In this document: positions 15,722 through 57,012 of the stretch, piece after piece
How positions within the stretch are numbered: position 1 is the first letter of the stretch
Layout of the letters: every line of letters starts with the position of its first letter
Origin: Haliotis rufescens
Lineage: Eukaryota
DNA: 64,000 nt
NCBI RefSeq assembly: GCF_023055435.1
Contig: NW_025963824.1
Coordinates: forward strand, 30,256,001 to 30,320,000
Direction: 5' to 3'
The notes under the pieces: generated by a model
The model's database searches: none
The model's input: only the letters and a program-made list of their open reading frames with translations
What the model was told of the DNA's origin: nothing
Made by a program: the position numbers and the translations under genes

Positions 15722-15799
15722 GTGCGGACACTCTTCGTCAGCGGACTACCCATGGATGCAAAGCCAAGAGAACTGTACTTGTTGTTCAGGGCATATAAG
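15722..15799 (+). CDS. cpo: couch potato/MEC-8/RBPMS-family protein, exon E2 (start of RRM1; gene 5'-partial)
   Basis: tttgcag|GTG...AAG|gtaacc; 78 nt, phase 0-0; [26 protein letters not shown], the RNP2/helix-1 signature of Cpo/MEC-8/RBPMS. Confidence 0.97.
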
Positions 15800-19770: not shown

Positions 19771-21536
19771 AAATAGGGATGAACAAAGCAAGCAGTTGAA
19801 GATGGAGGTATACAAAAGAAGATGATAGAGCATGCTCCTTGTTTGACTGAAAGCTGCTCATCATTTTCATTCATGAAGTTCCCATTAATAGGTCACGTCA
19901 AAGCCATGCCAGCCTTTAAGGACGAAGAATATCACGGGCATATAATAATTGGTCTCTAGCTTCTCATCACCCGTCCTGCAACCAATTATATTTCTGCATT
20001 AACATCCGCACGCTTAAATAGGTCTAGACCAATTTCCGAGTTTATATTTCTTGAAGCATTATTTGACGTCATGATTCTTCATCCAGACTTAGTTCTACCC
20101 AAATCTGGTAACTGGTCACTTGCTTGAAATATATTTCTTGGCTAACTTTCCATGTGAAATGAGATTTTTTTTTACAAGCATTATTTAGATCATTGGTGTT
20201 TGAGTTTGGATGTGGCGCTGGTGAAGAGTGGTTGAACGACTATGTTCACGTATTGCAATTGATCAGTTGTAAGCCCATGAGACTATAACAATCTGCTTGA
20301 CAACATTCTACCGATATAGTTTTGAGACATTTGAGATTGGAATGTGTGTTGCTATGGCGACCATCTTTTTTTGGTTGGATTTTCAAGAGAAATGAAAAAA
20401 AGGTTCACAATTACAGATTTACTTGAGTAGGTTTCTATGAAACGTAAAGGTCACTGGGTTCAGAATTCATTCAGGACTCATAACGTTGACTTCAAAACAT
20501 TTTTGTTTTTGAGACCTTACAAGAAAAAGTTATTGTTGGTTTTAATTTTTTTTTTAATATTTCTAGAAAATGAACATTCTGATATTTTGGCTACACTCAG
20601 CTATTTTGTACAATATGTGGGTGTTATGCTTTAAAACATGCACAAAACTGAAAACCAACCCTCGAATGAAACTGAGTAGTTACAGAGTTGTCTCCCTTTG
20701 TTAACAAGCATTTCAAAATGCTGTGATGGAGGAAAGTGTTCAGTACTCCTCGTTTCACAATGACAAGGACATTTGCATTAACAGAATTTCCATTATTGAT
20801 TATTTACCCCAAAATAATATATACTCAAGAGTGTTGCGAATAAATGTCAATGTAAGTCGACACGAAAAGCTGTTACAGGAAAGTGCATGTCAAGCTTAGA
20901 ATTATCACTGCACTTTACAGTAATGACATTCCTCCATTGGCGATATTTTTCAGTTTTGTATCGAATACAAATTACATGCGAAAGGAAATGGAAGATGGAA
21001 AATTGAAATTGTTGTGTTAAAATGTGGACTGAAAAACTGAGCACTGAGGAGAAGATAAAACGCGATGGGACATAAGGCTGGAGTAGGTCCTCGGTTAAGA
21101 CCTCCCCAGTGTGTCATTACAGAAACCACGACTATTGATCATGCAGCGCTAACAATGTGATGATAATTTTCATATACAATCTGTGGGTTTACGTCTTCCT
21201 TGATAAATTTAATGGGGGATCATTGATCTCGCATATACTGAGGTTTGTATTGACAAGTTAGGCTGCAACGGTTTCTTCAATAACTGTTGTCATTGTGGAG
21301 TCCCTGAGATGCCAGGATCTGCTAATCACGAGTTCGATTCCAACATTCACCCCATTTTGAAATCCCAGTTTGTCACACAATTTGTGTGTCTGTGGTTTTC
21401 ATGAAATTGGTAAATAGTCACACCTCTCACCACAAAGGTATCTCCATCCACATGAAGCTGATGCGCCAAGACCGAACTCATTTAGTGGCAATAAACCCGA
21501 CACTCACTCACTTATTCTAATTATTCTGAAGGTGAA

Positions 21537-21707
21537 GGGGCGGTCGGGTAGCCTAGTGGTTAAAGCGTTCGCTCGTCACGCCGAAGACCCGGTTCGATTC
21601 CCGACATGGGTACAATGTGTGAAGCCCATTACTGATGTCCCCTGCCGTGATATTGCTGGAATATTGCTAAAAGCGGCGTAAAACCATACTCAATCACTCA
21701 CTCACTC
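21537..21707 (+). mobile_element. SINE family A (near intact)
   Basis: Head resembles tRNA-Asp (cgctcGTCacgccgaagaccc-ggttcgattccc); 14-bp TSD TCTGAAGGTGAAGG. Confidence 0.9.
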
Positions 21708-22823
21708 TGAAGGTGAAGGTCATTGATTAGCCCGGGCAGGTCAAACGCCAACTAGTCCATGGTGATATAAGATGGAGAGACGCAGCCTTCTTCCTCATTG
21801 AGAGCACTGGAGTGATTCATCTCGCGTCATAAACACCGCTCTCTGTATATCCCACTGACAATCAGGATTAGCTTTGGGAAACGGCTCATTCTACTTAATT
21901 CTAGTTCTAGTTTACACAGTTTTACGCTCAGCATCGAGTAGTTTTCATCTTGGCGAAGCTGGATAAAATGGGGCAGCGATATATCTCTCCCTTGGGTGCA
22001 CTCCCAGATCCTGGCACACCTGCAGCCAGGATATTCCCGGACCGACGGCCAGGAGGACCAGACGTCTTCCCGGACAGCCAGATGCCCAGTCAGGTGTGAA
22101 CCCCTCACTCCACACGTAACTTGTCTGTGCTTCAAGCATATGCATGAATACTCGCCATAGAGAGTCTTTTTCCATGCCATTGATTTTTGCAGTGCAAATT
22201 TGCCCCGCGGGACTGGAGCATGGCAATTGTGAGAAGCATGGAGCTAAGATAGTGTCTAAGACCTTCGATAATTATTGATTCGTCCCTCCATCTTCCACAA
22301 AAACCTTCTGTCCCCCCCTCCATCCCCTTGCCACAACAAACCTTGAAGCTGGCCTGCTTGATGGACTGGCGATCGTGTGTATTTTTAATGAGCCAAAGTG
22401 GGCCAAAATTTTTCTGACAGTTCATGCCTCGAAGTGCTCTCCGGCAAAGTGTTAGTTTTGTTCAACGAGCAATACCTTGGAGAAAAACTTCCATATCTTC
22501 TTCAACCTGCGTCCCCTGTTGGGATGAGAGGGATAATGATGTGAACGTCCAATGTTTACTTAATATTTTGCAGGGGTTTCCCAGTAGTTGAGTGATGGTA
22601 TCTCCTCCAGATTCATGTCAACATCCGTTTTGTTGGCATACATGATGCCATTTCACCATGTTTGTCTTTGTTTTTACCGTCACTATGACATTTTTTCAAA
22701 CCCCAAATGTCAAATTTTAAATACACAAACACCCACTGATGATAATCATTACAGAAATGGGAAAGTCAGTCAGTGTTATCAAATTTGACTGTGAAGGTAT
22801 CCTTCCTTTTATGGAATGAAGGA

Positions 22824-23197
22824 GGTCTGTGAAGATCCGGGGTAGAATAGGTCTTCAGGAACCCATACATGGTTTTTCCCGGAGAACTAAAAATAAATGA
22901 CAAATGGTGTGCTTCTTCCAGGTTAAACACAAACACTATTGACGTGACTATAAGATGCATTTTATGACAGGGTCGGTGCTATAGAGGTCCGTTATATCTG
23001 ATATAAATAAATGCGACAAAATCTTTCCATAACTGTAAGAGACCTGTGAAGATCCAGGGTAGAATAGGTCTTTATCAACCCATGCTTGCCGTAACAGGCG
23101 ACTATGCTTGTCGTTGTAGGCGACTAACGGGATCGGGTGGTCAGGCTCTTTGACCATTGTTGTTGCATGTCATCGATCCCAATTGCATGGATCGATG
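22824..23197 (+). mobile_element. two family D 5' fragments (22824-22870 and 23041-23197)
   Basis: Same head sequence as the 3095 and 25805 copies. Confidence 0.75.
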
Positions 23198-23699
23198 AAA
23201 TATTTCATGTTGCGAATGGCAGACAGTGTCATTGTTGTCAGGGGACCTGCAACATTTCATGGGCATCCCTGCTGTGGGATTCTGGGTAGAATGTGTACAT
23301 CACTTCCTGTGCAGATGATGCTGTGGGATTCTACAATGGGAGGTCACAACTCTGTCCAACCGACTGGTGTCTTTGTACCCCGGTTCATGCTGACTGTTGC
23401 TCACACTATCGACCACTGGTTTGTGTGTTAGTACTGACCATGTTTAAAGGCTCAGTTAAATGTTTAAGCTTGCATCCACACCACTTTAAATCCTGTGGAA
23501 CCAAACCCCCTCCATTGAAATTGCCGCACTATCGACCACTGGTTTGTGTATCGGTACTGACCCAGTACTGTTAAATGTTTAAGCTTGTATCCACACCTCT
23601 ATAATTCCTGTGGAACCAAACCCCTTCCATTGAAATAGCCGCACTATCGACTGGTTTGTGTATTCCATTGTGTTTGTCATTTGTTGCTGTCATTTTCAG

Positions 23700-23753
23700 G
23701 GATTTGAAAATGGTTTATTAAAAGTTATGGGGAAGCCTGGCAAAAATAACTGT
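23700..23753 (+). CDS. cpo: cpo exon E3a, divergent duplicated (putative mutually exclusive) exon in RRM1
   Basis: cattttcag|GGA...TGT|gtgagt; 54 nt, phase 0-0; GFENGLLKVMGKPGKNNC, 10/18 identical to E3b with no gaps. Confidence 0.88.
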
Positions 23754-23780
23754 GTGAGTATATGAGAAATTCTGTGGATG

Positions 23781-23902
23781 CACACATACTTGGTCACATG
23801 ACATGTCACATGACCTGTCACATGATCACCCAGCTACCAGAGTATTCACTTTCACAGTTGGCTTTCAACACCCCACAGGTCACGCCTTTCATACACCTTC
23901 AC
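23781..23902 (+). promoter_or_regulatory. CAC-motif cluster downstream of E3a (candidate Cpo/RBPMS binding element)
   Basis: 13 CAC trinucleotides in 122 nt, including three GTCACATGA. Confidence 0.6.
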
Positions 23903-24336
23903 ATCGCATAATACGGTATTATTATCCATGTATTAATGTCATATAAATGTTGTCAATAACTTTCAAATAACCACTGGCTTTCTTCGAATGCAGAACATTA
24001 AAAATCAAACTGTCTCCTGTAAATCCATTCATTCTACATCAATGTTTGATGTTTTGCAATCAAAATTTATGTTAATTGTAGTGGTCAAATTGTAAATCAA
24101 TGGGTTTTTTATGTTTTGTTTATATATCACTAATAGAAAGCTAAGTTTCTTGGATTCTATGTAGTGTAATGTTTTTTGTGAAAAACTTTGAAAATGGAAG
24201 ATTGTTACATCACACTAACAGTATGACAGGCATTGCATGAGAATCTAAAATACCAAGTCATGAAAACGACAATACTTTAACAAGAGGGACTTGCACAAAA
24301 GCATCAAAGGCGGTGATTCTCTTGGAGAAGTGAATC

Positions 24337-24520
24337 CACCCAGTGTTGCGTTTTCATCGACACAAATGAGCACAGTCACATGACCAGGTCAGACACCCAC
24401 ATGCTAGAGCCACCGCATGTAGATATATCGACTGCCATGTTGGTACACCTCCCGCCAGTCCAGCAAACGCCATTAACACGTTCATAGCATCAGCCGACTT
24501 GCAGTAGCGTCACGAGGCAC
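24337..24520 (+). promoter_or_regulatory. CAC-motif cluster upstream of E3b
   Basis: 11 CAC in 184 nt, including two GCAC; 3 more CAC inside E3b. Confidence 0.55.
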
Positions 24521-24536
24521 ATTTCTATTCTTGCAG

Positions 24537-24590
24537 GGATATGAAGGGTCACTTCTCAAGGTCACCAACAAAAACGGCAAAAACACATCA
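24537..24590 (+). CDS. cpo: cpo exon E3b, canonical RRM1 beta2/loop exon
   Basis: ttcttgcag|GGA...TCA|gtaagt; 54 nt, phase 0-0; GYEGSLLKVTNKNGKNTS, matching the family GYEGSLLKVT.KNGK motif. Confidence 0.96.
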
Positions 24591-25804
24591 GTAAGTATTC
24601 ACCGTCACTGTGAGTTATCTCCCCTGTAATGCAGACTTTTCAAATTTTGAGGGACATTGGCCGGTAAAATTGCATCAGATGATGATGAAATAGTAATATA
24701 TAAAATATGTTTCTGTGTAGGAAGTTTGAAAGGTCTAGCAAGTGAAGGGAGATCACTCAGGAAGGTTAAATACTAGCAAAGATTGAAACAGATACCTAAA
24801 AAGAATTAATTCTCACGATTCATATATCAGCACGTTATAAGGAATAAAAAAAAAAAATCTAAATCTTTGCTATGTATTTTTTCCTTCCACTATATCACTC
24901 ATATACTGATGTAAAGTAATAAGGGAACACATGTCAGTTAGGAAGCAAATCACATTGCCCGATCCCTTTAGGCAACTCCAGTCACCTCCAGGGCACAATA
25001 CAGCTTGGTAAACATAGCCATTCCCTTATTACTTTTTGTGAGTATATTTGCTCTGTATGAACATTTTGTGTCTTTTGTTATTGTGTCAAGAATGTTGTAA
25101 TCCAGCTGTCAGCCTTTCTTCCAGGTGTCTTTGTTTGAATGTCTAATTTCAATCTGTACATCCTTTGACATGTGATTAAAGATTTCTCAACAAAATGTTC
25201 ATATCTGTCTCTGCATGTTGGTGTTGGTGGGAGGGGGGGGATGTGAATGAAGCTGCCTACAATCACTGCATCACGGTCCGTGCATGGCATGATGAGAGGG
25301 GAGACGATGATAACGCACTGTTAAACTCTCTCGTCTCCTGAGACTAAATTTATAGTTAATATCTGCACATTGAACCATGGTCTACAAACTGTCTCTCATC
25401 AACATTCAGGCCTTCGTATCTGAAATCTGACTTGCAATAGGACCAGGCTTTGTACTATACAGTTTGATGTGGGGGAGTTATCTTTTCCTGACCAATAACC
25501 TCCGTGCAGGTATAACAAGTGTCTGATATAAAGGCCACAGGAACACAGTAGGGTGGCTTATTCCAAATTTCAAAATTTCAAAATCTTATATAAGCAACAA
25601 CTAAACCCCCCTCTCTGGTTGCAAAACCTTTGTTTCCCTTTTCAAAATTCACTAAATGGCCCGGCCGGGCCCGTGTGCGAAATACGCTTCAGTCGGAAAG
25701 CGCACGTAAAATCTCCAATCCCATCCATCCAGTAGGGTGGTGTGTTCTACCATGGAGTGGGTTCACTCACACCCTGTACAGAAGTCGGAAATCAGTAATG
25801 GTGT

Positions 25805-26076
25805 GACCCGTGGAGATCCGGGGTAGAATAGGTCTTCAGCAACCCATGCTTGCTGTAAAAGGCGACTATGCTTGTCGTAAGAGGTGACTAAAAGGATTGG
25901 TGGTCAGGCTCCCTGACTTGGTTGAAGCATGCCATCATATCCCAATTGCGTCGATCGATGTTCATGATGTCAATCACTGAATTATCTGGTTCAGACTCTA
26001 TTTACAGACCTCCGTCACATAGCTGGAATATTGCTGAGTGCAGCGTTACTCAACAAACAAACAAACAAACAAACAA
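25805..26076 (+). mobile_element. family D retroposon, full length
   Basis: Colinear with the 3095 copy; (AAAC)n tail; approximate TSD agtaatg(g/t)tgt. Confidence 0.85.
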
Positions 26077-26429
26077 AGTAATGTTGTTATACTCTGTCCT
26101 GGCGTTTTCCTGGTTTGTTCTGCTGCTGTCATGTTTTGTATTGTATTTTTTAGTGTGTATAGTTCATGTTTTGTCCTCTGCTTTGTGCCATTGTGATCTG
26201 AAGCTTCTCTCTCAACTACGGTTGCCCCTAACAACCAAAGACTTAGTGTAGTAGGTGTGTGGAGGGCAAGTCTAAAGCTGATCTCTGCAACAGCTAGCTT
26301 ACCAATACTGAATGTCTGTTAGAGTATGAGAGCTGTAGTCTTGGTGCTAAGATGGATTTAATGAACTTGCCTTGATGGTGAAAATAGGGGTGGGATAGAG
26401 TACCAATACATATGTACACATACCTCTAC

Positions 26430-28200
26430 CATTACCCACACACCCATCTCCCACACCCCAACCCCAACCTTAACCCCAAACCCACCACTCACACCCCAAC
26501 CCCAAACCCAAACCCAAACCCACCACCCACACCCCAACCCTAACCTTAACCCCAAACCCACCACCCACACCCCAACCCCAAACCCAACCCCAAACCCACC
26601 ACCCACACCCCAACCCTAACCTTAACCCCAAACCCACCACCCACACCCCACCACCCACACCCCAACCCCAAACCCAGACCCATCACCCATCCTAACCATA
26701 ATCACCAACCGACACTCCAACCTAACCCCAAACACAACCACCCACACACCAGCCCTACCCCCAAACCCCAAACCCCAAACCCAAACCCAAACTCCCAATC
26801 CCAAACCCAAACCCAAACTCCCAATCCCAAACCCAAACTCCCAATCCCCAACCCAAACTCCCAATCCCAATCCCAATCCCAATCCCAATCCCCAACCCCA
26901 ACCACAACACCCTACTCCCAACCCCCTAATCCAAACCCCAACCACAACCCCCTAATCCCAACCTCAAACCCCAACCCAGGGGTCCGGAAACCGTCATATG
27001 CGCCGGACATGTCCGATTGGGAATCTCAAATGTCCGTTTTAAAATATTGCTTACCGGACATTTTAAAAAGAATTGTCCGGACATTCTTAAATTTTGACCG
27101 GACATGATCAACAGTTAGGACTGAGCAGTTTCTGTCTGCAGTTGCAACACAATGAAGATTAACTACACTGACAAGCTTTGTTTGTTTTGATTGCTGTAAA
27201 TACATCGTACCTACATGATAGTCCAATCTGTCAATCACTGTAATAGGCAATAAACTGAGTTGACACTGATTAATCGAGGATTAATTACTGAGAACATCTT
27301 GTTAATTTGAGTGAAAGGTGTTTACAACTGTACATTAATACCTTGCATCATCGATGTACCTCATAATCCTCACAATGCTACGATACGTAACCTCAGACAA
27401 GAAGGGAAAGCGTGACGACAGGCAGTCGACCGATGCAGATCAGTCGAGCGGATCTGCCAAACCCTCAAAGTCTGGACGATCATTTTGTAAGTCGTGGCTA
27501 ACGACTTTCACTTGGTTGACATACAATGAGGATTTGCAGATTTTATTGTTTTCAGTAGCTAGTCGTATATTGAATCTTGATTGACCGCCATTTTGCTTTC
27601 TCGGACGATCAATATCCAAAAAAATTATGGTCAATAATTAAGTACAGATGAAAAAAGTATTCAAATAACTATTGCTATCAACGATATTTTAGTATTTGTG
27701 ATTAAATTATCTGTCTTGTTTTTAAAAAAATCTTTAGTTTAAAAAAAGCTTTTCACGTGAGGTCACGTGATAACCAAATATGGGATAATAGTCTCGATCC
27801 AAATGTTACAACGCGTACACTTGAGCAGACTCATGAATATAACTCATGAATATTAACTAGACCGTTCACTACGTTAACAGATCGTTATTATAACAGAAAC
27901 AAACATATTTTTTCCATGTAAATCTAAAATGATATTATTTGTTATTAATTGTCCGGTGAATTAAACAATTTAAATTGAAACAATTCATAATTCATCATAT
28001 TATGAATACGTAAACTTGTAATGTGTGTGAAAAGTCGTACTAAAATACGCTATTTGAAGGGGGCGTGGCCTAAATGCAAATGTCCGATTGGGATTTTAAA
28101 TTTTCCGGACCCCTGCCCCAACCACAACACCCTACTCCCAACCCCCTAATCCAAACCCCAACCACGACCCCCTAATCCAAACCCCCAAACACCAACACAC
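26430..28200. repeat. C-rich low-complexity tract (CCCAAA/CCCAAT/CCCAAC) split by the hAT element
   Basis: 26430-26976 and 28116-28200. Confidence 0.85.
26977..28115 (+). mobile_element. non-autonomous hAT element carrying a transposase 5' remnant
   Basis: 14-bp TIR CAGGGGTCCGGAAA, exact 8-bp TSD CCCCAACC, TCCGG/TGTCCG subterminal repeats; 27375-27584 encodes RSFCKSWLTTFTWLTY (TTF-type zinc-finger start). Confidence 0.92.
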
Positions 28201-30756: not shown

Positions 30757-30819
30757 CCGGTGGGATTTGTCACGTTTATATCCAGAGTTGCTGCCGAGTC
30801 CGCCAAACAAGACCTTCAG
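30757..30819 (+). CDS. cpo: cpo exon E4 (RRM1 RNP1)
   Basis: ttttcag|CCG...CAG|gtgaga; 63 nt; PVGFVTFISRVAAESAKQDLQ. Confidence 0.97.
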
Positions 30820-30962: not shown

Positions 30963-31101
30963 GGAGTAAGATTCGACCCTGACCTCCCTCAGACCTTGAG
31001 ATTGGAGTTCGCCAAGAGCAACACAAAAGTGACGAAGCCTAAACAACAGTCTCCCCAGCTCGCCGCCACCCACCCCACCATCATCCACCCCCTCACAGGA
31101 C
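30963..31101 (+). CDS. cpo: cpo exon E5 (end of RRM1)
   Basis: tctttcag|GGA...GGA C|gtaagt; 139 nt, phase 0-1; [46 protein letters not shown]. Confidence 0.97.
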
Positions 31102-35231: not shown

Positions 35232-36356
35232 TGATTAACATGTTGAATATTCTAGTAATAGATATGACTTTCTTTCTGGACGTCGAAGAAGCAGATGAAT
35301 AATGAAAATAGTGGCAAGTTAACAGTTGAACGTGACATGTTGAATAAGGACATCAGGATATAGAAGAATTGGTTAGAATCTTTCTATTATGTTAAAACAA
35401 AATCATATGTTGGCTGATAAAATTTAGATAAAATATGCTGTTAAGCAGATAACTTTAAATTTTCAAGATGCAGTAATTTGTCTGATATAAAGAAGGACCT
35501 AATGTTTATTTATAAGCAATACATATCATTCCAGTCAAGAACAAAGGTTTCTAACTGAAATCATCTTGTTCAAAGTACTAAGTAACCAGAATGGTAACTA
35601 ACTTTTGGTGTCACCAGTAGAATCAGGAAAGAGATTTTAATACTTTAATACTAATATTAAAAAAAGTTCATTCATAGATATGAAATCTTATTGTGAAGAA
35701 AGTTGTGCTGTGGCGTCATTAAGACGTTTGACGTCCACTTACTTCCGTAAAAATGAGTGCAGATATCTCATTTCTCTCTTGTTCTTTTGCAATATAATAA
35801 AAACATTACCTAGTTTTTCAAAACATTTCAGCATACGTCTACAAGGTTAATCTAAAAACTGCAATTATGACATAAACAGTTATTATTCTGAAAATAGGAC
35901 TTTTCAGAAAATGATTCCAAATGTTTGATACAATGTATCTCTGTAATAAATATGAATTGAAACGTATGAATTGTACTTTCGTTGTCCTAAGATACTGTAG
36001 TTTTAAAATATGAGAAGTAAAAGTGATTTTTCACACATAATGTCCCATCTCATGGGGTGGTCACAAAATTAGGATGTTTATAAATTTAGATAATTCCGTT
36101 TCAATAAACAGATATCAGCTTCTCTAAATATCTATGCTAGTTTCTAAATAAAAACAAAATCATGTATGGTATATTTTTAAAAAATATGTATTTTGAACAA
36201 AATGTCATTCAATCATTAAATAGTGTTGAAGCTGGTAATCGTAAGCTTGCAGCTTATAAGAGAGAGATGACAAGTTTGTTTGCAAATGACCTTCTGTATT
36301 TCACTCACCCTACTAGCAAATTCACGTGTGCGTGTCTTTTTTACCTTCACTTGCAG

Positions 36357-36493
36357 AAGAGTTAGGTGCCGCCTTTTTCCCGGGCTGCCCCGAAGCTTGG
36401 GCCCCCCACCCTCTTGCTCCGTACCCCGAACTGGCACCAACTGCGGCAGCGCTACACCACACTGCACTTATTCAACACCCGGCGCTAGCACAG
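36357..36493 (+). CDS. cpo: cpo exon E6 (Pro/Ala/His-rich linker); 3' end may extend to 36505
   Basis: cttcacttgcag|AA GAG...CAG|gtaccg; phase 1-0; (Q)ELGAAFFPGCPEAWAPHPLAPYPELAPTAAALHHTALIQHPALAQ; second in-frame donor CGG|gttagt at 36505/36506. Confidence 0.9.
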
Positions 36494-36574
36494 GTACCGG
36501 TGCGGGTTAGTGTTTCCTCTCCTTCATTTATTGCACAGTGCAAAGAAACACCGAGGAGGACGGGCCCTACGGCG

Positions 36575-42750: not shown

Positions 42751-43612
42751 TTCTGTTGTGTTACACTTTTCAATGTCTATTTTAGTCGGAAAACAATAGA
42801 AAGTATCCATACCATATCATTTCCGCTGCAGAAATAAACTAAGCAGTGTTAGAAATTGTTAGTCCTTGCCAAACTGCTAAATAGTTAAGGTATCATAAGG
42901 ACTAGTAGAAATTTGCCAATTTTAAGGGTTTTGCTATATGCTATCATTATAATGACTAGTGGACTAAGGAATGTGCTCTTCGCAGCACTGCAATAAGATA
43001 GAAAGCTGTGGAGTGTCGCGCCTTGTGCAGATACAGTTGACGTAAGTCGGTTCACTAAATAAAACCGACAAGTATTGAGCAAGAAAATCCAGGCTTAAAC
43101 TTGTGTTTTATGACAGAAAAATCCTAGGATCACACCTTTATTGAAATCCAAAGAAGCTGAATATTTCAATTCCAATTTGTCGATGATTTACTAGCAATTT
43201 GTCTACTACATCAGATTCAGAAACCACCACAACCCTTTGCAACATCTCCTGGCTCCCTATGGCAATACCAGGTTGGTCCGATCTCACACCTCTTCAAGGA
43301 ATGGAGAAATTCTCCTTCCTTCTCTCACAACTTCTGGCTCAACATGCCTGACACAAACAATTCTGGCCTATTCGAAAAAAGAATTTATGAATTTAGATGC
43401 AAACTGGTGACTTCAAAAATCAGACCTATTTTGAAAGAGTTCAGAAATTCAGATTTGAATGATTGACCTGAGATATTTTGGCCCTTAATGATTGATAAAT
43501 CCGAATGATTGTCTTGAATCTGACGAAATTTTGGGTATTTTAAAACAAATTTGGTTATTTAAATTTGAAAAAAGAATTTTTGTTGCATTCAAATTAGTGA
43601 TATGGGATTAAT
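41638..43612 (+). repeat. ~590-bp direct duplication (41638-42224 and 43019-43612)
   Basis: Colinear, few substitutions, one 7-nt indel. Confidence 0.93.
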
Positions 43613-44302
43613 TCGAACAGATTCAGTGTCCAGATTGAAATGTCATTTGTTAAAACCAGATCACATTGAACTTTTGGTTATTTTTTATAGAACCATGAAA
43701 ATAATTTATTTTAATGATGACAATCAGAATATTTTATTTTAGACTACCTGGAAATTAAACTTTTCCTTTTTAAAAGTCCTGAAAGCTTTATTGAATCAGA
43801 TGTTAACTGAACATCTATCAGGAAGGAATGTTGTAATCAGTGACCCTGAACATTAAGTAAAGCAACGGTTTAAACATAAAATCCTGAAATTCTCCGTTGC
43901 TGCAGGTTCTTGCACTCTGTACAACTCCACCATATAATCAGACTATTTTTTTTGTGCTTATACTGGTACTTGCTTTTTTACAAATGGCTCTAGTTTGTAT
44001 AGTGCAATAAGAAATTGATTAAAGTGAGAATCTTTAGCAAGGGCTTGTAGAAATGAAATGTTTGTGTGTTGCTTAATTTGAAAATTAAATGCATTGATTA
44101 CTTATTCTGTTGTTTTGCAAATGATTGGCATACTTCCAATTGTCAGAGCTATGCATACAGTCAGTATCATATGGCAGATAAATGTTTTTGGAAGAAATTT
44201 TTGTGAATATAACTATGCCAGATATTTGTTATGGATCTTATATAATGTCTCTTCATCATGTCTTTGTATTCGTGTACAGGTGCCTCTACCCTCTTTACCA
44301 TG

Positions 44303-46004
44303 TCCCCCAACCCCTGACCACATCCTCACCAATGCTGACCCCCAACCCTGTCCACATCCCCGCCAACGCTGACCCCCAACTCTGTCCACATCCCCACGAA
44401 CGCTGACCCCAAACCCTGTCCACATCCCCACCAATGCTGACTCCCAACCCTGTCCACATCCCCACCAATGCTGACTCCCAACCCTGTCCACATGCCCACC
44501 AACGCTGACCCCTCAACCCCTGACCACATCCCCACCAATGCTGACCCCCAACCCTGTCCACATCCCCACCAATGCTGACCCCCAACCCTGTCCACATCCC
44601 CGCCAACGCTGACCCCCAACCCTGTCCACATCCCCACGAACGCTGACCCCAAACCCTGTCCACATCCCCACGAATGCTGACCCCCAACCCTGTCCACATC
44701 CCCACCAATGCTGACCCTTCAACCCCTGACCACATCCCCACCAACGCTGACCCCCAACCCCTGTCCACATCCCCACGAACGCTGACCCCAAACCCTGTCC
44801 ACATCCCCACCAATGCTGACCCTTCAACCCCTGACCACATCCCCACCAACGCTGACCCCCAACCCCTGTCCACATCCCCACGAACGCTGACCCCAAACCC
44901 TGTCCACATCCCCACCAATGCTGACCCCCAACCCTGTCCACATCCCCACCAATGCTGACCCTTCAACCCCTGACCACATCCCCACCAACGCTGACCCCCA
45001 ACCCCTGTCCACATCCCCACGAACGCTGACCCCAAACCCTGTCCACATCCCCACCAATGCTGACCCCCAACCCTGTCCACATCCCCACCAATGCTGACCC
45101 TTCAACCCCTGACCACATCCCCACCAATGCTGACCCCCCAACCCCTGTCCACATCCCCACGAACGCTGACCCCAAACCCTGTCCACATCCCCACCAATGC
45201 TGACCCCCAACCCTGACCACATCCCCACCAACGCTGACCCCCAACCCTGACCACATCCCCACCAATGCTGACCCCCCAACCCCTGACCACATTCCCGCCA
45301 ACGCTGACCCCCAACCCTGTCCACATCCCCACGAACGCTGACCCCAAACCCTGTCCACATCCCCACGAATGCTGACCCCCAACCCTGTCCACATCCCCAC
45401 CAATGCTGACCCTTCAACCCCTGACCACATCCCCACCAACGCTGACCCCCAACCCTGTCCACATCCCCACCAATGCTGACCCCCCAACCCCTGACCACAT
45501 CCCCACGAACGCTGACCCCAAACCCTGTCCACATCCCCACCAATGCTGACCCCCAACCCTGTCCACATCCCCACCAATGCTGACCCCCAACCCTGTCCAC
45601 ATCCCCACCAACGCTGACCCCCAACCCCTGTCCACATCCCCACCAATGCTGACCCCTCAACCCCTGACCACATTCCCATCAACGCTGACCCCCCCCAACC
45701 CTGTCCACATCCCCACCAACGCTACCCCCCAACCCCTGTCCACATCCCCACCAATGCTGACCCCCCAACCCCTGACCACATTCCCATCAACGCTGACCCC
45801 CCCAACCCTGTCCACATCCCCACCAACGCTGACCCCCAACCCCTGACCACATGCCCACCAACACTGACCCCCCAACCCCTGTCCACATCCCCACCAATGC
45901 TGACCCCCCAACCCCTGACCACATTCCCATCAATGCTGACCCCCCAACCCCTGACCACATCCCCATCAACGCTGACCCCCCCAACCCCTGACCACATCCC
46001 CAAC
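44303..46004. repeat. 34-36-bp C-rich minisatellite, ~49 copies
   Basis: cccccaaccctgtccacatccccaccaatgctga. Confidence 0.95.
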
Positions 46005-47324
46005 CTCAGCTACCAGGCACAACCTACCACTGCTACCCCAACCCCAACCCCAACCCAACCCCAACCTCCAATATCATAGCTGCCAATCATTGTCCACAGC
46101 CAACTCTCACAACCAACAACCCTCCACCCCCAATCCGCCCCAACACAACCCCCCAACCTCCACCCAACCTTCCCAAGTCGAAGAAGCACCCATCTTGTGT
46201 GTCTATTCTACCACCCTCCATCACTCCAGCTGGTGTTCCCCAAGCTGGTGTTCCCCAAGCTGGTGTGTTTGTTGATTTGTTGAAATGAGAACAGAAGCCA
46301 CTGATTCAGGAAAATAGCATTCCGCCACTCATCCTTAGCTTTTATGAAAAGCTAACATTAGAATGCCCAAGGGAATCATTGGTAATATGTTGATGCATTC
46401 CGAGCCTGTCTCTAAAATGTATTAATCTCATTGACTGAAATAGATTTATTTACCTGTGAGTAAATTAGGAGTGACAAAATCTAAGGGGATTATTTTGCTG
46501 CAGATGAGTCGTAGCAAGCTGTAATCTTGTCACTGCATCAAATCGGCAGTGCTTCGGTGTCAGCTACTTCTAAGATGCTTGTTAGCTTCACGCCTTGCAC
46601 TTTGTCTAAATTACCTAGGGAGCCCGATAAGCGAATGTAGTTAATGCTACTTTCTGGAAAACTGTTTATCTTAATTCGGGAGCCTCAGGCGAACATTGAG
46701 CTTTGTTGCTCTGGTAATGGGGGCTCGATCAACCAGCCATTGCCACAAATTGTCCAGCCCCGACCAAAAACTGTTTCTTGTTCACACCTTACAACGATCC
46801 ATTTATCTTTTCATCGAGGCACAATTGTGATAACTAAATTCTGTATGGCACTGTCCGAACTGCCAGTTCTTGTTACGGAGAATCAATGCCCACAATTCCA
46901 AGGGAAGTGGCTATCAGCATGAATGGTCGGCATGTGGTCGGCTCCCAGCTGGTGTAACACAACACCTTGGGCAGCTTGTCAATAGGCCAGACTGGTCCTT
47001 CTCTATCAGTCTTCCCCAGTATTTCCAATCCCACCTTCCACCCACCACCAACCACCCAGTCACCTTCCACCCATCCACCCACCACCCATCCACCCGCCAC
47101 CCAGTCACCCACCACCCAGTCACCTATCGCAGATCCACCCAATTACCACCCACCTCCAATTCACTTTCCGCTCCAAGCCTACCCAATACAGTTTCCTCCC
47201 CAGTGTCAGTCTTGATTGTATTTCAGGATAAGTCAATGATTTGTCTTTCTGGCTTGTCTTGACTTGACTTTTCATTTGACAGCTATTTTTTTTACAAGGT
47301 GTAAGTTCTCTTTTAATCTAGCTA

Positions 47325-48270
47325 AATATTTCCCATCCCAGTATTACCCCTCCCCATATTCCTCATCCCCTTATTCCCTATCCCCTTATTCCCTACCCCT
47401 TTATTCCCCATTTAGGCATTCCCCATCCCCATCCCCATCCCCATCCCCGTTTTCCCCATCCCCGTATTCCCAATCCCCATTATTCCCCATCCCCATAATC
47501 CCCATCCAGGTATCCCCCGTATTCTTCATCCCAATATTCCCCATCCCAGTATTCCCCGTATTCCTCATCCCCATATTCCTCATCCCAGTATTCCCCATCC
47601 CAGTATTCCCCATATTCCTCATCTCAGTATTCCCCATATTCCTCATCCCTGTATTCCCCATCCCGATATTCCCCATCCCCGTATTCCCCATCCCTGTATT
47701 CCCCATCCCTGTATTCCCCATCCCCGTATTCCCCATCCCAGTATTCCCCGTCTTCCCCGTCTTCCCCATCCCCATATTCCCCATCCCAGTATTCCCAATA
47801 TTCCTCATCTCAGTATTCCCCATATCCCTCATCCCTGTATTCCCCATCCCAGTATTTCCCATATTCCTCATCTCAGTATTCCCCATATTCCTCATCCCTG
47901 TATTCCCCATCCAAGTATTCCCCATTTTCCTCATCTCAGTATTCCCCATATTCCTCATCCCTGTATTTCCCATCCCAGTATTCCCCATATTCCTCATCCC
48001 AGTATTCCCCATCCTAGTATTCCCCATATTCCTCATCTCAGTATTCCCCATATTCCTCATCCCTGTATTCCCCATCCCTATATTCCCCATCCCCGTATTC
48101 CCCATCCCCGTATTCACCATCCCAGTATTCCCCGTCTTCCCCATCCCCATATTTCCCATCCCTGTATTTCCCATCCCAGTATTCCCCATATTCCTCAACC
48201 CCATATTCCCCATCCCAGTATTCCCCCACCCCAGCATTCCCCATCCCCATATTCCCCATCCCCGTATTCT
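47325..48270. repeat. pyrimidine-rich simple repeat (TATTCCCCA/TCCCCA)
   Basis: 9/15-bp periodicity, ends ~110 nt before E7. Confidence 0.9.
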
Positions 48271-48382
48271 CCTTCCCACTCTCTCCCTGCCAGCTGAGCC
48301 ACCAGGACACACAGACCGGAGAATGTCATCGACTGTTTTGTTTCATGCCACCATGTTGACCCCCGTCTGTGTTCTCTTCCAG

Positions 48383-48633: not shown

Positions 48634-50529
48634 GTGAGGCCACGCTATTTGTAAGATGGATTTGGAACTGAGGCCAAAAATTGTTACCGAAAAATCAAGA
48701 ATGGTTAGAACCAATGGCCGCCAGGGGTGCTTCTATTTTTAACAGGTCTTTGACCATGGGAGTGAGGTTTGAAATCATTTTAGTGGGTGAAATAAAACAA
48801 AAAGGTCTTCAGCAAATCTGTCTGCATAGGTTTCAGCAACTTTAGTTCAAATGACTTTTGAGAAATATGTTGTGGTTTGAAACAATGGCCACTGAAAATA
48901 TACTTGTAAGTTGTTCAACAGCTCTTTGAGAATGTCTTTTGAGGGGTCATGTCCACGAAGATGTGAGCATCAGATGGCATGGGGACAAGTAAATCGCACT
49001 TAAAGCAGTATTTGGGGCTTGATTAATCTAGTGGAACAATTTGATGTCTTGCTACAGTCACCTTTATGTAGAACATAGCTGCACATGTTAGCTGGTAAAG
49101 TCGGTTGAGGGGCACTAAGGTAGACAGGCAGTATGTTAGGTTGTTAGGAAACCAGCATGTTTGAACTTGGCAACACGCTCCGTGCATCAACACCCAATCA
49201 TCTGCTGACGTACATGTATCAGTGTTTCATGACAACTAGTTACAAACCTCAAGTTTCCAGCCCACCCTAAGTGGAAATATGGCGCCAATTGGCTGCTTTG
49301 AAATAATTTTGAAACAATGTGGCAAATTATGTGGTTGAATTTTCTGATTTTCAAACATATCTAAATTGATTTATGTATACATTTTAGATCCATATTGAGT
49401 AAAAGTTTGAACCAAAATTCGCAGGGGAAAGAACTAGCACCAATGTCTTTGGTCGAGGTAACTTGTTGTTTGTGAAGTGTTCTTGATTTGTGGAAACTTG
49501 TGCTAGTTTTTGTGTTGACGTACTGTACAGTCTTCGTACCACATTCATACCATTGACTTGTCTGTACAGAACCACTTATGATTTTGAACGTGAATTTTTT
49601 TTATTCCATTGCAACTGAGTGACTTTGTACTCTTGTGTTCCAACCATGTAGCCATGCGTATCACTTGTGAACACATGGCCATGCCACTCACAGAATGTTC
49701 TATGGTTGACTATTTCCTCATGGTATTTTCAGCGTACATTTCTTCCCTGCATTGTAATCAACTCAGCTTTAGTTTTACACCACAAACTTCAACTCTAAAA
49801 ATAATGGAAATTTTCGGATTTTGTAAACATGATTCAATTGACTATTTTCAGATCAATCTTGAAATTCTCTTGGATTTTTATAAAGATGAGACAATTGTCG
49901 CTGAATGCACTTGTTTTAATGTGGTGTATTTCTAAACAATAAGTTTCATGCACTCATAGACAAATTATGTCCCTTGATGCACAATTTTAGGAGAGTTACC
50001 TCCCTTCTTTCTTGCTTTTCTAACAGACTCTTTGCATTTATATCAAGTAATCGTTTATGGTCTCAAATTGTCAATTTTGTATGATATTTATCTGGTATCG
50101 GTAAATATGGTCATAATTGATAATTTGTATACAGAGAATGTAAGGGTAAGAGCCTTACACAGTTGTCCTTCATTGAAGTAATACAATACACAACTTAACA
50201 TGTGGAAGCATAACTAGAAATGCAATTCTTTAGACTCTCCTTCTTTCTAATGACATCCATTGATCTTTATGAAGACGTATATCAGTAATTATGTTTATAC
50301 CATGACAAACTACATCAAACGTTGATAGCGTGGAATTAAAGGTAAATGTGATTTCTAACCATCACAAGACGTCCAGCATCAAAGAAGAAAAATCAATAAC
50401 TTCTGAAATGACTCCAGAATTGGAATCTAAGGGAAGGAACTCTCCTAACCACAAAGCTGTCCACAGTTACCCCCCTTGAAGTGTTTTGCTCTTTCCTGCT
50501 GACATTATTTTGCTTTTTTTCTGTTTCAG

Positions 50530-50599
50530 TTTTGCAGGATTTAGCCGACTGCGTATGCACAATAAAGGAGGATCACCTGTAGCTTTTGTAGAATACCAG
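50530..50599 (+). CDS. cpo: cpo exon E8 (RRM2 RNP1)
   Basis: ctgtttcag|T TTT...CAG|gtgtgt; 70 nt, phase 2-0; (S)FAGFSRLRMHNKGGSPVAFVEYQ. Confidence 0.95.
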
Positions 50600-53764: not shown

Positions 53765-54081
53765 TCGTGACAAGCATGAGGTACTGGTGACCAATACCCC
53801 TGGTGGCACCAGAGACTGTGTAGCAGTATCATCACTGTTATTATTTAAACTGCCATTATGGATGTATTTATCAAATGGTATCAAAGTTCCCTTCCAATAC
53901 AAACAGCAAAAAAGGGACTTGACTTCACAAATGGAGAAATCGACAGATATATGATTATTATGTCAGCTTTTAAAAGAAAATGCAATAACATGTTGAGTTT
54001 GTACAGGCAGTATTAAAGGGAGATAATATCAAAGGGAGGTAAGTTAAAGGGAGGCAACTGATGTTTTGTTGTTTGTTGCAG

Positions 54082-54192
54082 GATGTTGCTCAGGCCTCAA
54101 TGGCAATGAATCGCCTTCAAGGCTTTGTTTTGCTCTCTTCTGATCGAGGAGGACTTCGTATTGAATATGCAAAGAACAAAATGGGGGAAGTG
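54082..54192 (+). CDS. cpo: cpo exon E9 (end of RRM2)
   Basis: gtttgttgcag|GAT...GTG|gtgagt; 111 nt; DVAQASMAMNRLQGFVLLSSDRGGLRIEYAKNKMGEV. Confidence 0.96.
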
Positions 54193-55584
54193 GTGAGTGG
54201 AGTTTAGTCCTTGATCCAACAAGTAAGGATAATTAAATTATTCTCCTTCAGGGGCCTATCTGCTTAGTCTCCAGCCCTGCACCAGCATGACCAAGCTTTC
54301 AGATAGTTGCCGAGTCTGTGGTGTAAAATTCAGCTTCAGGGCCTTGTGTATTTCATGTTGGCCCTGCACCATGCATGGTAAAATGTCAGCTAGATTGAAA
54401 TGTAAATATGTATTCTGTGATGCCTATATTTCAAAGGATTAATGTTGTGTCTAACACATCAAGACAGCTAATGATGCAGTACGCCAGGAACGATTTTTAG
54501 AAAATTTCAACGTCATTGTAGTGACGATTTGAGTACCAAGTAGACATATATTCGGTAAATATCATAAAGATTTGGTGTCTTTCACTGGTGAAAATCATCT
54601 GGTCACATGCTTGAAGACATAAACTTTGAACACGGCGTCACTTCATTTCTCGCTTTGGCACAGGAACCACTGCAGCATCACATCTATAGACTCTCTTTCA
54701 CAACACCAACTTGAACACAGATCTGTGGGTCAAAATGGATGACCTCGGTTTTGTGCACAAGTTAATATCTTTTGACAATCAATTGGAATCCTGAAATTCA
54801 ATGTTTTACAAATGCTGTCACTATGCTCATGTCAGTAGGTTTTCTGTCCTCATATTTACATGTAGACTTGTCTGGAGGGTTCTTTCATCGCAAACTGTTT
54901 TCCTCACAACTGACAAGAGTCCATTTTTTTCTTGTTTCAAAGGGTTCAGAATTTTGAGGAGTTGACAGTAAGACTACAGGTTGTTGTTATAAACCAAAGC
55001 TTTATAACCAATTTCCTCTAACACCTGTTTGCAGTTTCTTTCATCCTATTTGACCTAGTGCCAACTAGTTTTCAGGAAAATAGTTTTCCTACCCTCCTAA
55101 GGCTCCAGTGTGCTGGAACAGTGCATATTAACATGTGTTGGTTGATTTGGCGTTAATGGACCACTATTATCCCTGAGCATCACTAACCCACAGAAAGACG
55201 ATGAAGCCAGTTCTCAGTGTGTTCCTCTAGAAGTGTATTCACAAACAATGTCGGCCTCCTCCCCGAGATCATCCTGTACATGGGCGTGTCACACCCTCAT
55301 TGGACGCGGTTTTCAGAATTAAAGGGCAAGTAACGGGATTTTTTCGTTTGGGGGAGGATTTCGCATATGGGGGTCATATTATAGTGTCTGTTTTAAGCTA
55401 TGTTCATTTGTCAGAATTAATTTTGGTCAAGCATTTGTGATTAAATATGCCCTAATGTATTCACATCTGCATAGTTACTATGTTTACTTTACTAACGACG
55501 CTAAGACAATGAAAAACTACTCGTTCTCAGGCCATCTTTTAATGTGCAGTCTCAGCATGGTCAGACGAAGTTGTGAGGGGTTGT

Positions 55585-56952: not shown

Positions 56953-57012
56953 GGTAAAAAGGATGACTTCAACATTCTACAGTCCCCAGTTTCCATGGCG
57001 ACAGCATTTTGA
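56953..57012 (+). CDS. cpo: cpo terminal coding exon E10
   Basis: ttttcttctttttcag|GGT...TTT TGA; strong acceptor, phase 0; GKKDDFNILQSPVSMATAF*; followed by U-rich, SINE-free sequence. Confidence 0.8.
   Translation, partial: GKKDDFNILQSPVSMATAF

What the first reader, a model, noticed from the sequence alone, without database searches (positions are those of the whole stretch)
23700..24590. Tandemly duplicated, probably mutually exclusive 54-nt exons that swap the beta2/loop segment of RRM1 in couch potato/RBPMS
Seen: two exons of identical length (54 nt) and phase (0-0), 783 nt apart, both with strong splice sites (ttttcag/gtgagt; cttgcag/gtaagt). They encode GFENGLLKVMGKPGKNNC and GYEGSLLKVTNKNGKNTS. 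Ten of 18 residues are identical while codons differ synonymously (TTA TTA AAA GTT vs CTT CTC AAG GTC), which points to an old duplicate kept under protein-level selection. Established: E3b matches the canonical Cpo sequence, and including both exons would put 18 extra residues in the RRM sheet. Inference: the gene makes two RRM1 variants that may differ in RNA affinity or specificity. I do not recall this being described for the family. Neither exon appears in the ORF track. Frame and spacing cannot enforce exclusivity, so it must be actively regulated.
Basis: partly seen in the sequence, partly recalled or inferred. Interest (0 to 1): 0.9.

Follow-up and report, generated by a model that had tools for sequence, protein, structure and literature searches.

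The report
Ancient alternative RRM exons, abalone RBPMS
The abalone version of the RNA-binding protein couch potato/RBPMS/MEC-8 carries two old, tandemly duplicated 54-base exons that give alternative versions of an RNA-contacting strand; the pair is real and shared by molluscs, an annelid, a brachiopod and a nemertean, but public gene models already list it and show it is not strictly either/or.

Summary
Window 23700-23753 (E3a) and 24537-24590 (E3b) are two 54-nt, phase 0-0 exons with AG/GT borders. They share 10/18 residues and 27/54 bases. Third codon positions look saturated.

The gene is the only couch potato/RBPMS/MEC-8 gene of a Haliotis genome, most like H. rufescens. Exon 3 encodes MEC-8 residues 56-73, which form strand beta2 and the beta2-beta3 loop of RRM1.

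An E3a-type exon occurs in retrieved isoforms of bivalves, gastropods, cephalopods, the annelid Owenia, the brachiopod Lingula and the nemertean Lineus. It was not seen in the arthropods sampled. Every E3a-type exon has Met where E3b, MEC-8 and RBPMS have the Thr that hydrogen-bonds the G of GCAC.

Strict mutual exclusivity is not supported. Among the retrieved proteins, 215 have E3b only, 34 have E3a only, 28 have both and 6 have neither. The Haliotis models include several with both exons. Assembled transcripts showed only single-exon forms.

In four probable RNA contig sets of abalone, E3b stands out and E3a does not. There is only one suggestive E2-E3a contig.

RefSeq already lists these isoforms, but I found no paper that describes them.

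The parts
15722..15799 (+). Exon E2 of the cpo/RBPMS/MEC-8 orthologue: RRM1 strand beta1 (RNP2) and helix alpha1 (dimer interface); phase 0-0
23700..23753 (+). Exon E3a: alternative beta2 plus beta2-beta3 loop of RRM1, with Met at the position of MEC-8 Thr65 and Cys at Ser73; phase 0-0
   Evidence: (100% to H. rufescens isoform X4, P0215)
23754..24536 (+). Intron between the two alternative exons (783 nt, GT-AG). It is CAC-rich and holds four copies of a CAC-containing 10-11-nt motif at 23793-23827 and 24375-24385
24537..24590 (+). Exon E3b: canonical beta2 plus loop (Lys63, Thr65, Ser73 of MEC-8 all kept); phase 0-0. This is the exon that stands out in the contig runs
30757..30819 (+). Exon E4: beta3 (RNP1) and helix alpha2; phase 0-0
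30963..31101 (+). Exon E5: beta4 and the C-terminal RNA-contacting tail of RRM1; phase 0-1

Best explanation
E3a and E3b are an ancient tandem exon duplication in the single cpo/RBPMS/MEC-8 gene of an abalone. The duplication predates the split of molluscs, annelids, brachiopods and nemerteans. Alternative splicing chooses which copy supplies strand beta2 and the beta2-beta3 loop of the dimeric RRM1. E3b gives the canonical domain and is the default in the samples examined. E3a is a regulated, probably minor or tissue-restricted alternative. It still folds as a normal RRM, but it replaces the Thr that reads the guanine of GCAC with Met and remodels the loop. I infer that it weakens or changes the preference for the base 5' of CAC while keeping CAC recognition and dimerisation. 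The choice is not hard-wired. Transcripts with both exons are in frame, and in the predicted structure E3b forms beta2 while E3a becomes a disordered insert. Transcripts with neither exon are also in frame and lack beta2. Both kinds are annotated. Shown: the anatomy, the conservation, the annotated isoforms, the single-exon transcripts in relatives and the residue mapping. Inferred: the effect on RNA specificity, the default/minor ranking and the regulation.
For: Anatomy and non-chance similarity. Gene identity: the exons are 100% identical to Haliotis isoforms, and the alternative 3' exon matches H. rufescens exactly but has 4 mismatches to H. cracherodii. The gene is single-copy in the genome. 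Conservation: there are 12 E3a-type peptide variants in bivalves, Haliotis, Patella, Babylonia, octopods, Owenia, Lingula and Lineus. E3a always lies 5' of E3b where both are present. Only the E3b type was seen in the tick, spider, shrimp, Daphnia and leafhopper clusters. E3a-only spliced transcripts sit on 1.4-1.5 kb contigs of ENA and Logan (P0251, P0308, P0309, P0263). Residue mapping: the alignment to MEC-8 chain 5bjr/5tkz has no gaps, so exon 3 equals residues 56-73. Lys63, Thr65 and Ser73 contact RNA, and Thr65 OH and the Ser73 carbonyl bind guanine N2. Replacing G lowers affinity 6-10 fold in MEC-8, 7-14 fold in cpo and 3-15 fold in RBPMS (PMC5311487). Position 10 is Met in all E3a variants. 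Fold: RRM1 of the E3a-only isoform is predicted with confidence and matches 5tkz_A at TM 0.95 and rmsd 1.5 A. In the both-exon isoform, residues 67-84 have pLDDT below 50 and the E3b copy forms beta2. Usage in abalone contig runs: the bin holding E3b has extra depth in 4 of 4 runs and the E3a bin has none. One X8 contig starts 26 letters before E3a, which is what a k=31 fork between E2-E3a and E2-E3b predicts.
Against: No junction counts could be obtained for this species. The runs were contigs of unrecorded library type, and the tool warns that their depth is not quantitative. The loose letters of the one suggestive contig were not printed, so the E2-E3a junction is inferred from numbers only. 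The many both-exon gene models could mean that co-inclusion is a main product and not a by-product. The specificity change rests on one structure paper and on residue identity. A Met could be neutral.
Confidence: 0.8

Rival explanations
1. A strict mutually exclusive exon pair: every mature mRNA carries exactly one of E3a or E3b, and the both and neither gene models are artefacts of automated model building or splicing intermediates.
For: Among cluster representatives derived from transcript assemblies, only single-exon forms were found (P0251 and P0263 against many E3b-only). The Lingula and Lineus models retrieved are all single-exon. The fold prediction gives E3a no structural role when both exons are present.
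Against: Both-exon models come from two independent pipelines (NCBI Gnomon and the Owenia annotation) in more than ten species, including four separately annotated Haliotis genomes. No known enforcing mechanism fits: the intron is 783 nt, both exons use ordinary GT-AG sites, any combination stays in frame, and the region has no unusual fold energy (z = -0.46).
Confidence: 0.25
2. Two independent cassette exons whose co-inclusion product is a main functional isoform, with an 18-residue extension of the alpha1-beta2 connection.
For: Both-exon isoforms make up most of the listed Haliotis models and include isoform X1. They are in frame and predicted to be compatible with the RRM fold.
Against: In four abalone contig runs the E3a bin shows no exon-like depth while the E3b bin does. 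No transcript-derived both-exon representative was found. E3a keeps beta2-type residues across phyla, which is not expected of a mere linker.
Confidence: 0.15
3. E3a is a decaying, unused duplicate (pseudo-exon) that gene predictors pick up by homology.
For: No clear exon signal at E3a in the four contig runs.
Against: The peptide is identical in four Haliotis species and differs at only 3 of 18 residues from the oyster/mussel E3a. It is recognisable in four phyla. Its length always stays a multiple of three. Spliced E3a-only transcripts exist in relatives. An organism-C contig shows no listed difference from 23661 to 23877, against about 2% over its whole length.
Confidence: 0.03

Closest known systems
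MEC-8 / couch potato / RBPMS RRM1 (PDB 5TKZ, 5BJR, 5DET; PMC5311487)
   Same: The domain is the same: RNP2, RNP1, the alpha1 dimer interface and the C-terminal tail are conserved. The alignment has no gaps (E = 3e-38). The E3b form keeps all listed RNA contacts.
   Different: [quoted passage not shown] Here part of RRM1 is itself alternatively spliced, and the alternative copy lacks the guanine-reading Thr.
Tandem duplicated exon substitution / mutually exclusive homologous exons (surveyed for human in PMC9741552 and PMC8373072)
   Same: Adjacent homologous exons of equal length and phase. The pair is ancient and kept at the protein level, and it swaps a homologous segment inside a folded domain.
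   Different: RBPMS is not mentioned in those two surveys (one search gives 0 occurrences). Here co-inclusion and double skipping are annotated, and no enforcing mechanism is visible.
Vertebrate paralogues RBPMS and RBPMS2
   Same: Two versions of the same RRM within one organism.
   Different: Vertebrates obtained them by gene duplication, and both keep Thr and a loop five residues shorter. The abalone has one gene and diversifies through one exon.
Distant-branch-point control of the OGDH exon 4a/4b pair (PMC7969005)
   Same: A mutually exclusive homologous exon pair where the intervening intron matters.
   Different: I know this paper only from its abstract. I made no branch-point mapping here, so whether the 783-nt intron uses such a mechanism is unknown.

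Membership tests
RBPMS / couch potato / MEC-8 family | Conserved RRM1 with the RNP2 and RNP1 aromatic residues (MEC-8 Phe34, Phe77) | tested here: met
   Exons E2 and E4 carry them. The alignment to 5bjr_A has no gaps, E = 3.1e-38.
RBPMS / couch potato / MEC-8 family | Helix alpha1 dimer-interface residues (MEC-8 Asp41 to Arg52) | tested here: met
   This stretch of E2 is identical to the MEC-8 chain in the alignment. The residues are listed in PMC5311487.
RBPMS / couch potato / MEC-8 family | C-terminal tail contacts after beta4 (MEC-8 Glu109 to Val117) | tested here: met
   E5 aligns without gaps to that part of the MEC-8 and RBPMS chains.
RBPMS / couch potato / MEC-8 family | Binding of tandem (G)CAC motifs as a dimer | not testable with these tools
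   Needs ITC, RNAcompete or CLIP.
RBPMS / couch potato / MEC-8 family | Guanine-reading Thr65 and Ser73 in beta2 and the loop | tested here: met
   Met for E3b. NOT met for E3a, which has Met and Cys at these positions.
Mutually exclusive tandem exon pair | Adjacent homologous exons of equal length and phase | tested here: met
   Both are 54 nt and phase 0-0, with 10/18 aa identical and a score far above background.
Mutually exclusive tandem exon pair | Each exon is used alone in mature mRNA | tested here: met
   Haliotis RefSeq isoforms exist with E3a only (P0215, P0275, P0286) and E3b only (P0285, P0176). Transcript contigs with E3a only exist in relatives. In this species' runs only E3b is clear.
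Mutually exclusive tandem exon pair | Never both and never neither in one mRNA | tested here: inconclusive
   There are 28 both-exon and 6 no-exon gene models among the retrieved proteins, including Haliotis. No transcript-derived both-exon representative was found. Junction counts were not obtainable. The evidence leans towards not met.
Mutually exclusive tandem exon pair | A mechanism that enforces exclusivity (short intron, incompatible splice sites, frame shift with decay, competing RNA pairing) | tested here: not met
   The intron is 783 nt. Both exons have GT-AG sites. Every combination is in frame. Fold z = -0.46 and only weak inverted repeats were found. Branch points were not mapped.

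The most novel reading that the evidence does not exclude
Across Spiralia, a splice-controlled swap of the guanine-reading strand of RRM1 gives one RBPMS-family gene two RNA specificities (GCAC against another NCAC or plain CAC). This retargets a master splicing and translation regulator by tissue or stage. The choice may be fed back through the conserved triple CAC-motif cluster just downstream of E3a.
Probability: 0.3. Interest if true: 0.75.

Novelty: new member of a known kind. Interest (0 to 1): 0.55.

Why it matters
RBPMS-family proteins are master regulators of splicing, mRNA localisation and translation. Their RRM1 has been treated as invariant across isoforms (PMC5311487). This exon pair has been kept for more than half a billion years (my own estimate from the phyla involved). 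It rewrites exactly the segment that reads the first base of the GCAC motif. That makes it a natural experiment on how an RRM tunes specificity, and a clean case where spiralians use alternative splicing where vertebrates use gene duplication. The idea can be tested directly with two recombinant domains and a Thr-to-Met point mutant. For the scan, the lesson is that the feature is real but already sits, uninterpreted, in automated annotations.

Tried and rejected
I therefore could not fetch orthologous loci to compare introns, splice sites or dN/dS.

2. Read laying (one call, 6,000 letters) could not hold E2 or E4 together with both E3 exons. All four runs were contigs of unrecorded library type. 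The joint and loose-end tables were swamped by intronic high-copy repeats, so no E3 junction rows were shown. The miRNA-seq raw-read runs were not useful.

I redid it from the stored protein files.

Exons were used by reference, and public isoform proteins stood in for the joined form.

5. I looked for RNA structure as an exclusivity device. The fold of 23680-24610 gave z = -0.46. The inverted repeats were weak, the best being 22 nt at 77% between 23757-23778 and 24886-24907. I rejected this as evidence because cross-species support is lacking.

6. I searched the genome for a paralogue as the source of E3a. There is none, and each of E3a, E3b and E5 hits only this locus.

7. Five literature searches found no description of this exon pair.

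8. Whether E3a exists outside Spiralia was tested only on a few arthropod clusters.

Full report
OBSERVATION. Window 23700-23753 and 24537-24590 are 54 nt each. Each is preceded by a pyrimidine-rich tract ending in AG and followed by GTGAGT or GTAAGT. Both translate in the reading frame of the gene to the two 18-residue peptides quoted in the finding.

They share 27 of 54 bases and 10 of 18 residues. Identity by codon position is 12, 10 and 5 of 18. Six of the ten conserved residues use different codons. This is the pattern of an old duplicate held by selection on the protein.

The similarity is not chance. Of 51,377 stop-free 18-codon windows on both strands of the window, E3a scores 49 (BLOSUM62) against E3b and the runner-up scores 28. 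Only 208 open 54-nt AG...GT windows exist in the window.

THE GENE. Six-frame motif scans and tblastn with public isoforms give these exons on the + strand:
- E2 at 15722-15799, encoding beta1 and alpha1.
- E3a and E3b.
- E4 at 30757-30819, encoding beta3 and alpha2.
- E5 at 30963-31101, encoding beta4 and the tail.
- Further exons near 36356-36505 and 43212-43271 (the latter alternative).
- The start of RRM2, ending at about 48634.
- 50528-50599 and 54079-54192.
- Two alternative 3' exons at 55194-55319 and 56953-57009.

E2, E3a, E3b and E4 are all phase 0-0. All exons are 100% identical at the protein level to Haliotis RefSeq isoforms. The 55194-55319 exon matches H. rufescens exactly and differs at four residues from H. 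cracherodii. The window is therefore red abalone or something very close to it.

The gene is single-copy. E3a, E3b and E5 each find only this locus in the 1.33-Gb assembly. Exons were searched by reference, and public isoforms were used for everything that needed a full-length protein.

WHAT THE EXON ENCODES. A Haliotis E3b isoform aligns without gaps to the MEC-8 RRM1 chain of 5BJR/5TKZ (E = 3e-38). Counting from Phe34 of RNP2, exon 3 is exactly MEC-8 residues 56-73.

According to Soufari and Mackereth (PMC5311487), three residues in this stretch touch RNA:
- Lys63 contacts an adenine.
- The Thr65 hydroxyl binds N2 of the guanine of GCAC.
- Ser73 binds the same guanine through its carbonyl, and also through its side chain.

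Replacing that G lowers affinity 6-10 fold in MEC-8, 7-14 fold in couch potato and 3-15 fold in RBPMS. E3b keeps Lys, Thr and Ser. E3a keeps the Lys but has Met for Thr65 and Cys for Ser73.

CONSERVATION AND ANNOTATION. A search of 1.8 billion representatives with exon E5 and three word-indexed searches with public isoforms were followed by cluster listings. Together they returned about 470 family proteins. Classifying the segment between alpha1 and RNP1 gives 215 proteins with E3b only, 34 with E3a only, 28 with E3a followed by E3b, and 6 with neither.

E3a-type exons occur in these groups:
- Oysters, mussels, scallops, venerid and myid clams, Dreissena and a unionid.
- Haliotis (four species with identical peptide), Patella, Babylonia and, in diverged form, Candidula.
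- Octopus and Argonauta.
- The annelid Owenia, as consecutive accessions of one gene.
- The brachiopod Lingula and the nemertean Lineus.

All 12 E3a variants have Met at position 10, where I used Met to sort the variants. Independently of that criterion:
- None has Gly at position 4.
- All have Gly or Ala at position 11.
- E3a lies 5' of E3b in every both-exon protein.

The strand part is conserved, while the loop part varies from 17 to 26 residues. E3b is always 18 residues. Clusters of ticks, spiders, shrimps, Daphnia and leafhoppers showed only the E3b type. That sample is small and does not prove absence.

The duplication is therefore at least as old as the common ancestor of these spiralian phyla.

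IS E3a EXPRESSED, AND IS THE PAIR EXCLUSIVE? In relatives, E3a-only open reading frames of 270-356 residues sit on ENA and Logan contigs of 1.4-1.5 kb (P0251, P0308, P0309, P0263). With introns of kilobases, these can only be spliced transcripts. A search with a both-exon Haliotis isoform ranked six both-exon cluster representatives at the top. All six come from genome annotation and none from a transcript assembly.

For this species, I laid four probable RNA contig sets from four studies and three species labels on 21500-27499. The 200-nt bin with E3b has extra depth in all four: 36, 13, 13 and 21. The bin before it has 0-4 and the bin after it 3-14. The E3a bin has only the depth of unspliced intron contigs, or none. 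The tool warns that contig depth is not quantitative, so I take this only as showing that E3b is clearly exonic and E3a is not prominent.

One X8 contig (record 28, 468 letters) fits from 23698 onward, starting at its 25th letter. E2 and the intron both end in AG, and E3a and E3b share their first four bases. Twenty-six foreign letters are therefore exactly what a 31-mer graph yields at a fork between E2-E3a and E2-E3b. The k = 31 figure is from my own knowledge of Logan. The loose letters were not printed, so this is suggestive and not shown.

An organism-C contig spanning 23350-24374 has 22 differences, but none is listed between 23661 and 23877. At its mean rate about 4.6 would be expected, which hints at constraint on E3a and its flanks.

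Both-exon and no-exon isoforms are annotated by two independent pipelines in more than ten species. In Haliotis they include isoform X1. Strict mutual exclusivity is therefore not supported by what is public, but it is not disproved at the level of abundance either.

None of the known enforcing mechanisms applies:
- The intron is 783 nt.
- The splice sites are ordinary GT-AG.
- Every combination stays in frame.
- The region folds no better than shuffles (z = -0.46).
- Only weak inverted repeats are present.

STRUCTURE PREDICTIONS. With a 44-sequence alignment, the E3a-only isoform (P0275) gives a confident RRM1. E3a forms beta2 (residues 64-71) and a loop. Its best PDB match is MEC-8 RRM1 bound to GCAC DNA (5tkz_A, TM 0.95, rmsd 1.5 A).

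The both-exon isoform (P0274) is predicted with residues 67-84, which is most of E3a, below pLDDT 50. The E3b copy forms beta2 next to beta3. If that is right, co-inclusion yields an E3b-type domain with a floppy insert.

Skipping both exons removes beta2 but keeps the alpha1 dimer interface. From memory of RRM-deleted RBFOX isoforms, this could make a dominant-negative partner. That idea is untested.

MECHANISM. The most likely reading is a default E3b and a regulated E3a. E3a would keep dimerisation and CAC recognition but lose or change the reading of the preceding base. The anatomy, conservation, isoform repertoire and residue mapping are shown. The specificity change, the tissue restriction and any autoregulation are inferred.

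NOVELTY. The kind of feature, homologous tandem alternative exons, is well known, and the isoforms are already in RefSeq for this very species. However, the structural paper on the family states that RRM1 is conserved in all splice isoforms. Two surveys of tandem exon substitutions do not mention RBPMS. Five literature searches found no description. I rate it a new member of a known kind. It is of moderate interest because it targets a base-reading residue and is conserved across phyla.

Taxa outside Spiralia and a few arthropods were not surveyed.

Noticed in passing
window 23793-23827 and 24375-24385: Three tandem copies (12-nt period) of a CAC-containing 10-11-nt motif lie 40 nt downstream of the E3a donor. 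A fourth exact copy lies 152 nt upstream of the E3b acceptor. CAC density in the E3a-E3b intron is 37/kb against 17/kb for the window. The first cluster lies in a stretch with no listed differences from an organism-C contig. The spacing resembles the tandem-motif spacing preferred by RBPMS dimers, as another first-stage note proposed.
   Followed up: partly
window 23404-23651: A local tandem duplication in the intron just upstream of E3a: 82-nt copies at 93% identity and 36-nt copies at 92%, spaced 115-123 nt.
   Followed up: no
window ~21537-21700, 22700-23300, 25700-26100: Very high-copy intronic repeats, with summed contig depth of 1e4 to 1e6 in all four runs. Loose-end consensus next to 21592 contains a tRNA B-box-like motif, suggesting a tRNA-derived SINE.
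   Followed up: no
window ~44000-48300: A GC-rich repeat block with strong strand skew (GC 0.58, GC skew -0.63 at 44001-46000). It reads as a long low-complexity open frame on the + strand just upstream of the exon that starts RRM2.
   Followed up: no
proteins P0296, P0297, P0310, P0320, P0321, P0007: Annotated isoforms of Crassostrea angulata, Octopus bimaculoides and Mya arenaria join E2 directly to E4. They lack beta2 of RRM1 but keep the dimerisation helix.
   Followed up: no
proteins P0216 and P0325 (Owenia fusiformis): The E3a-only isoform of Owenia carries eight extra residues after E3a that the both-exon isoform lacks. E3a therefore seems to use a different donor depending on its downstream partner.
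   Followed up: no
window 43212-43271, 55194-55319, 56953-57009: There is further alternative splicing in the same gene: an optional exon in the linker and two alternative 3' coding exons, each matching different Haliotis isoforms.
   Followed up: partly
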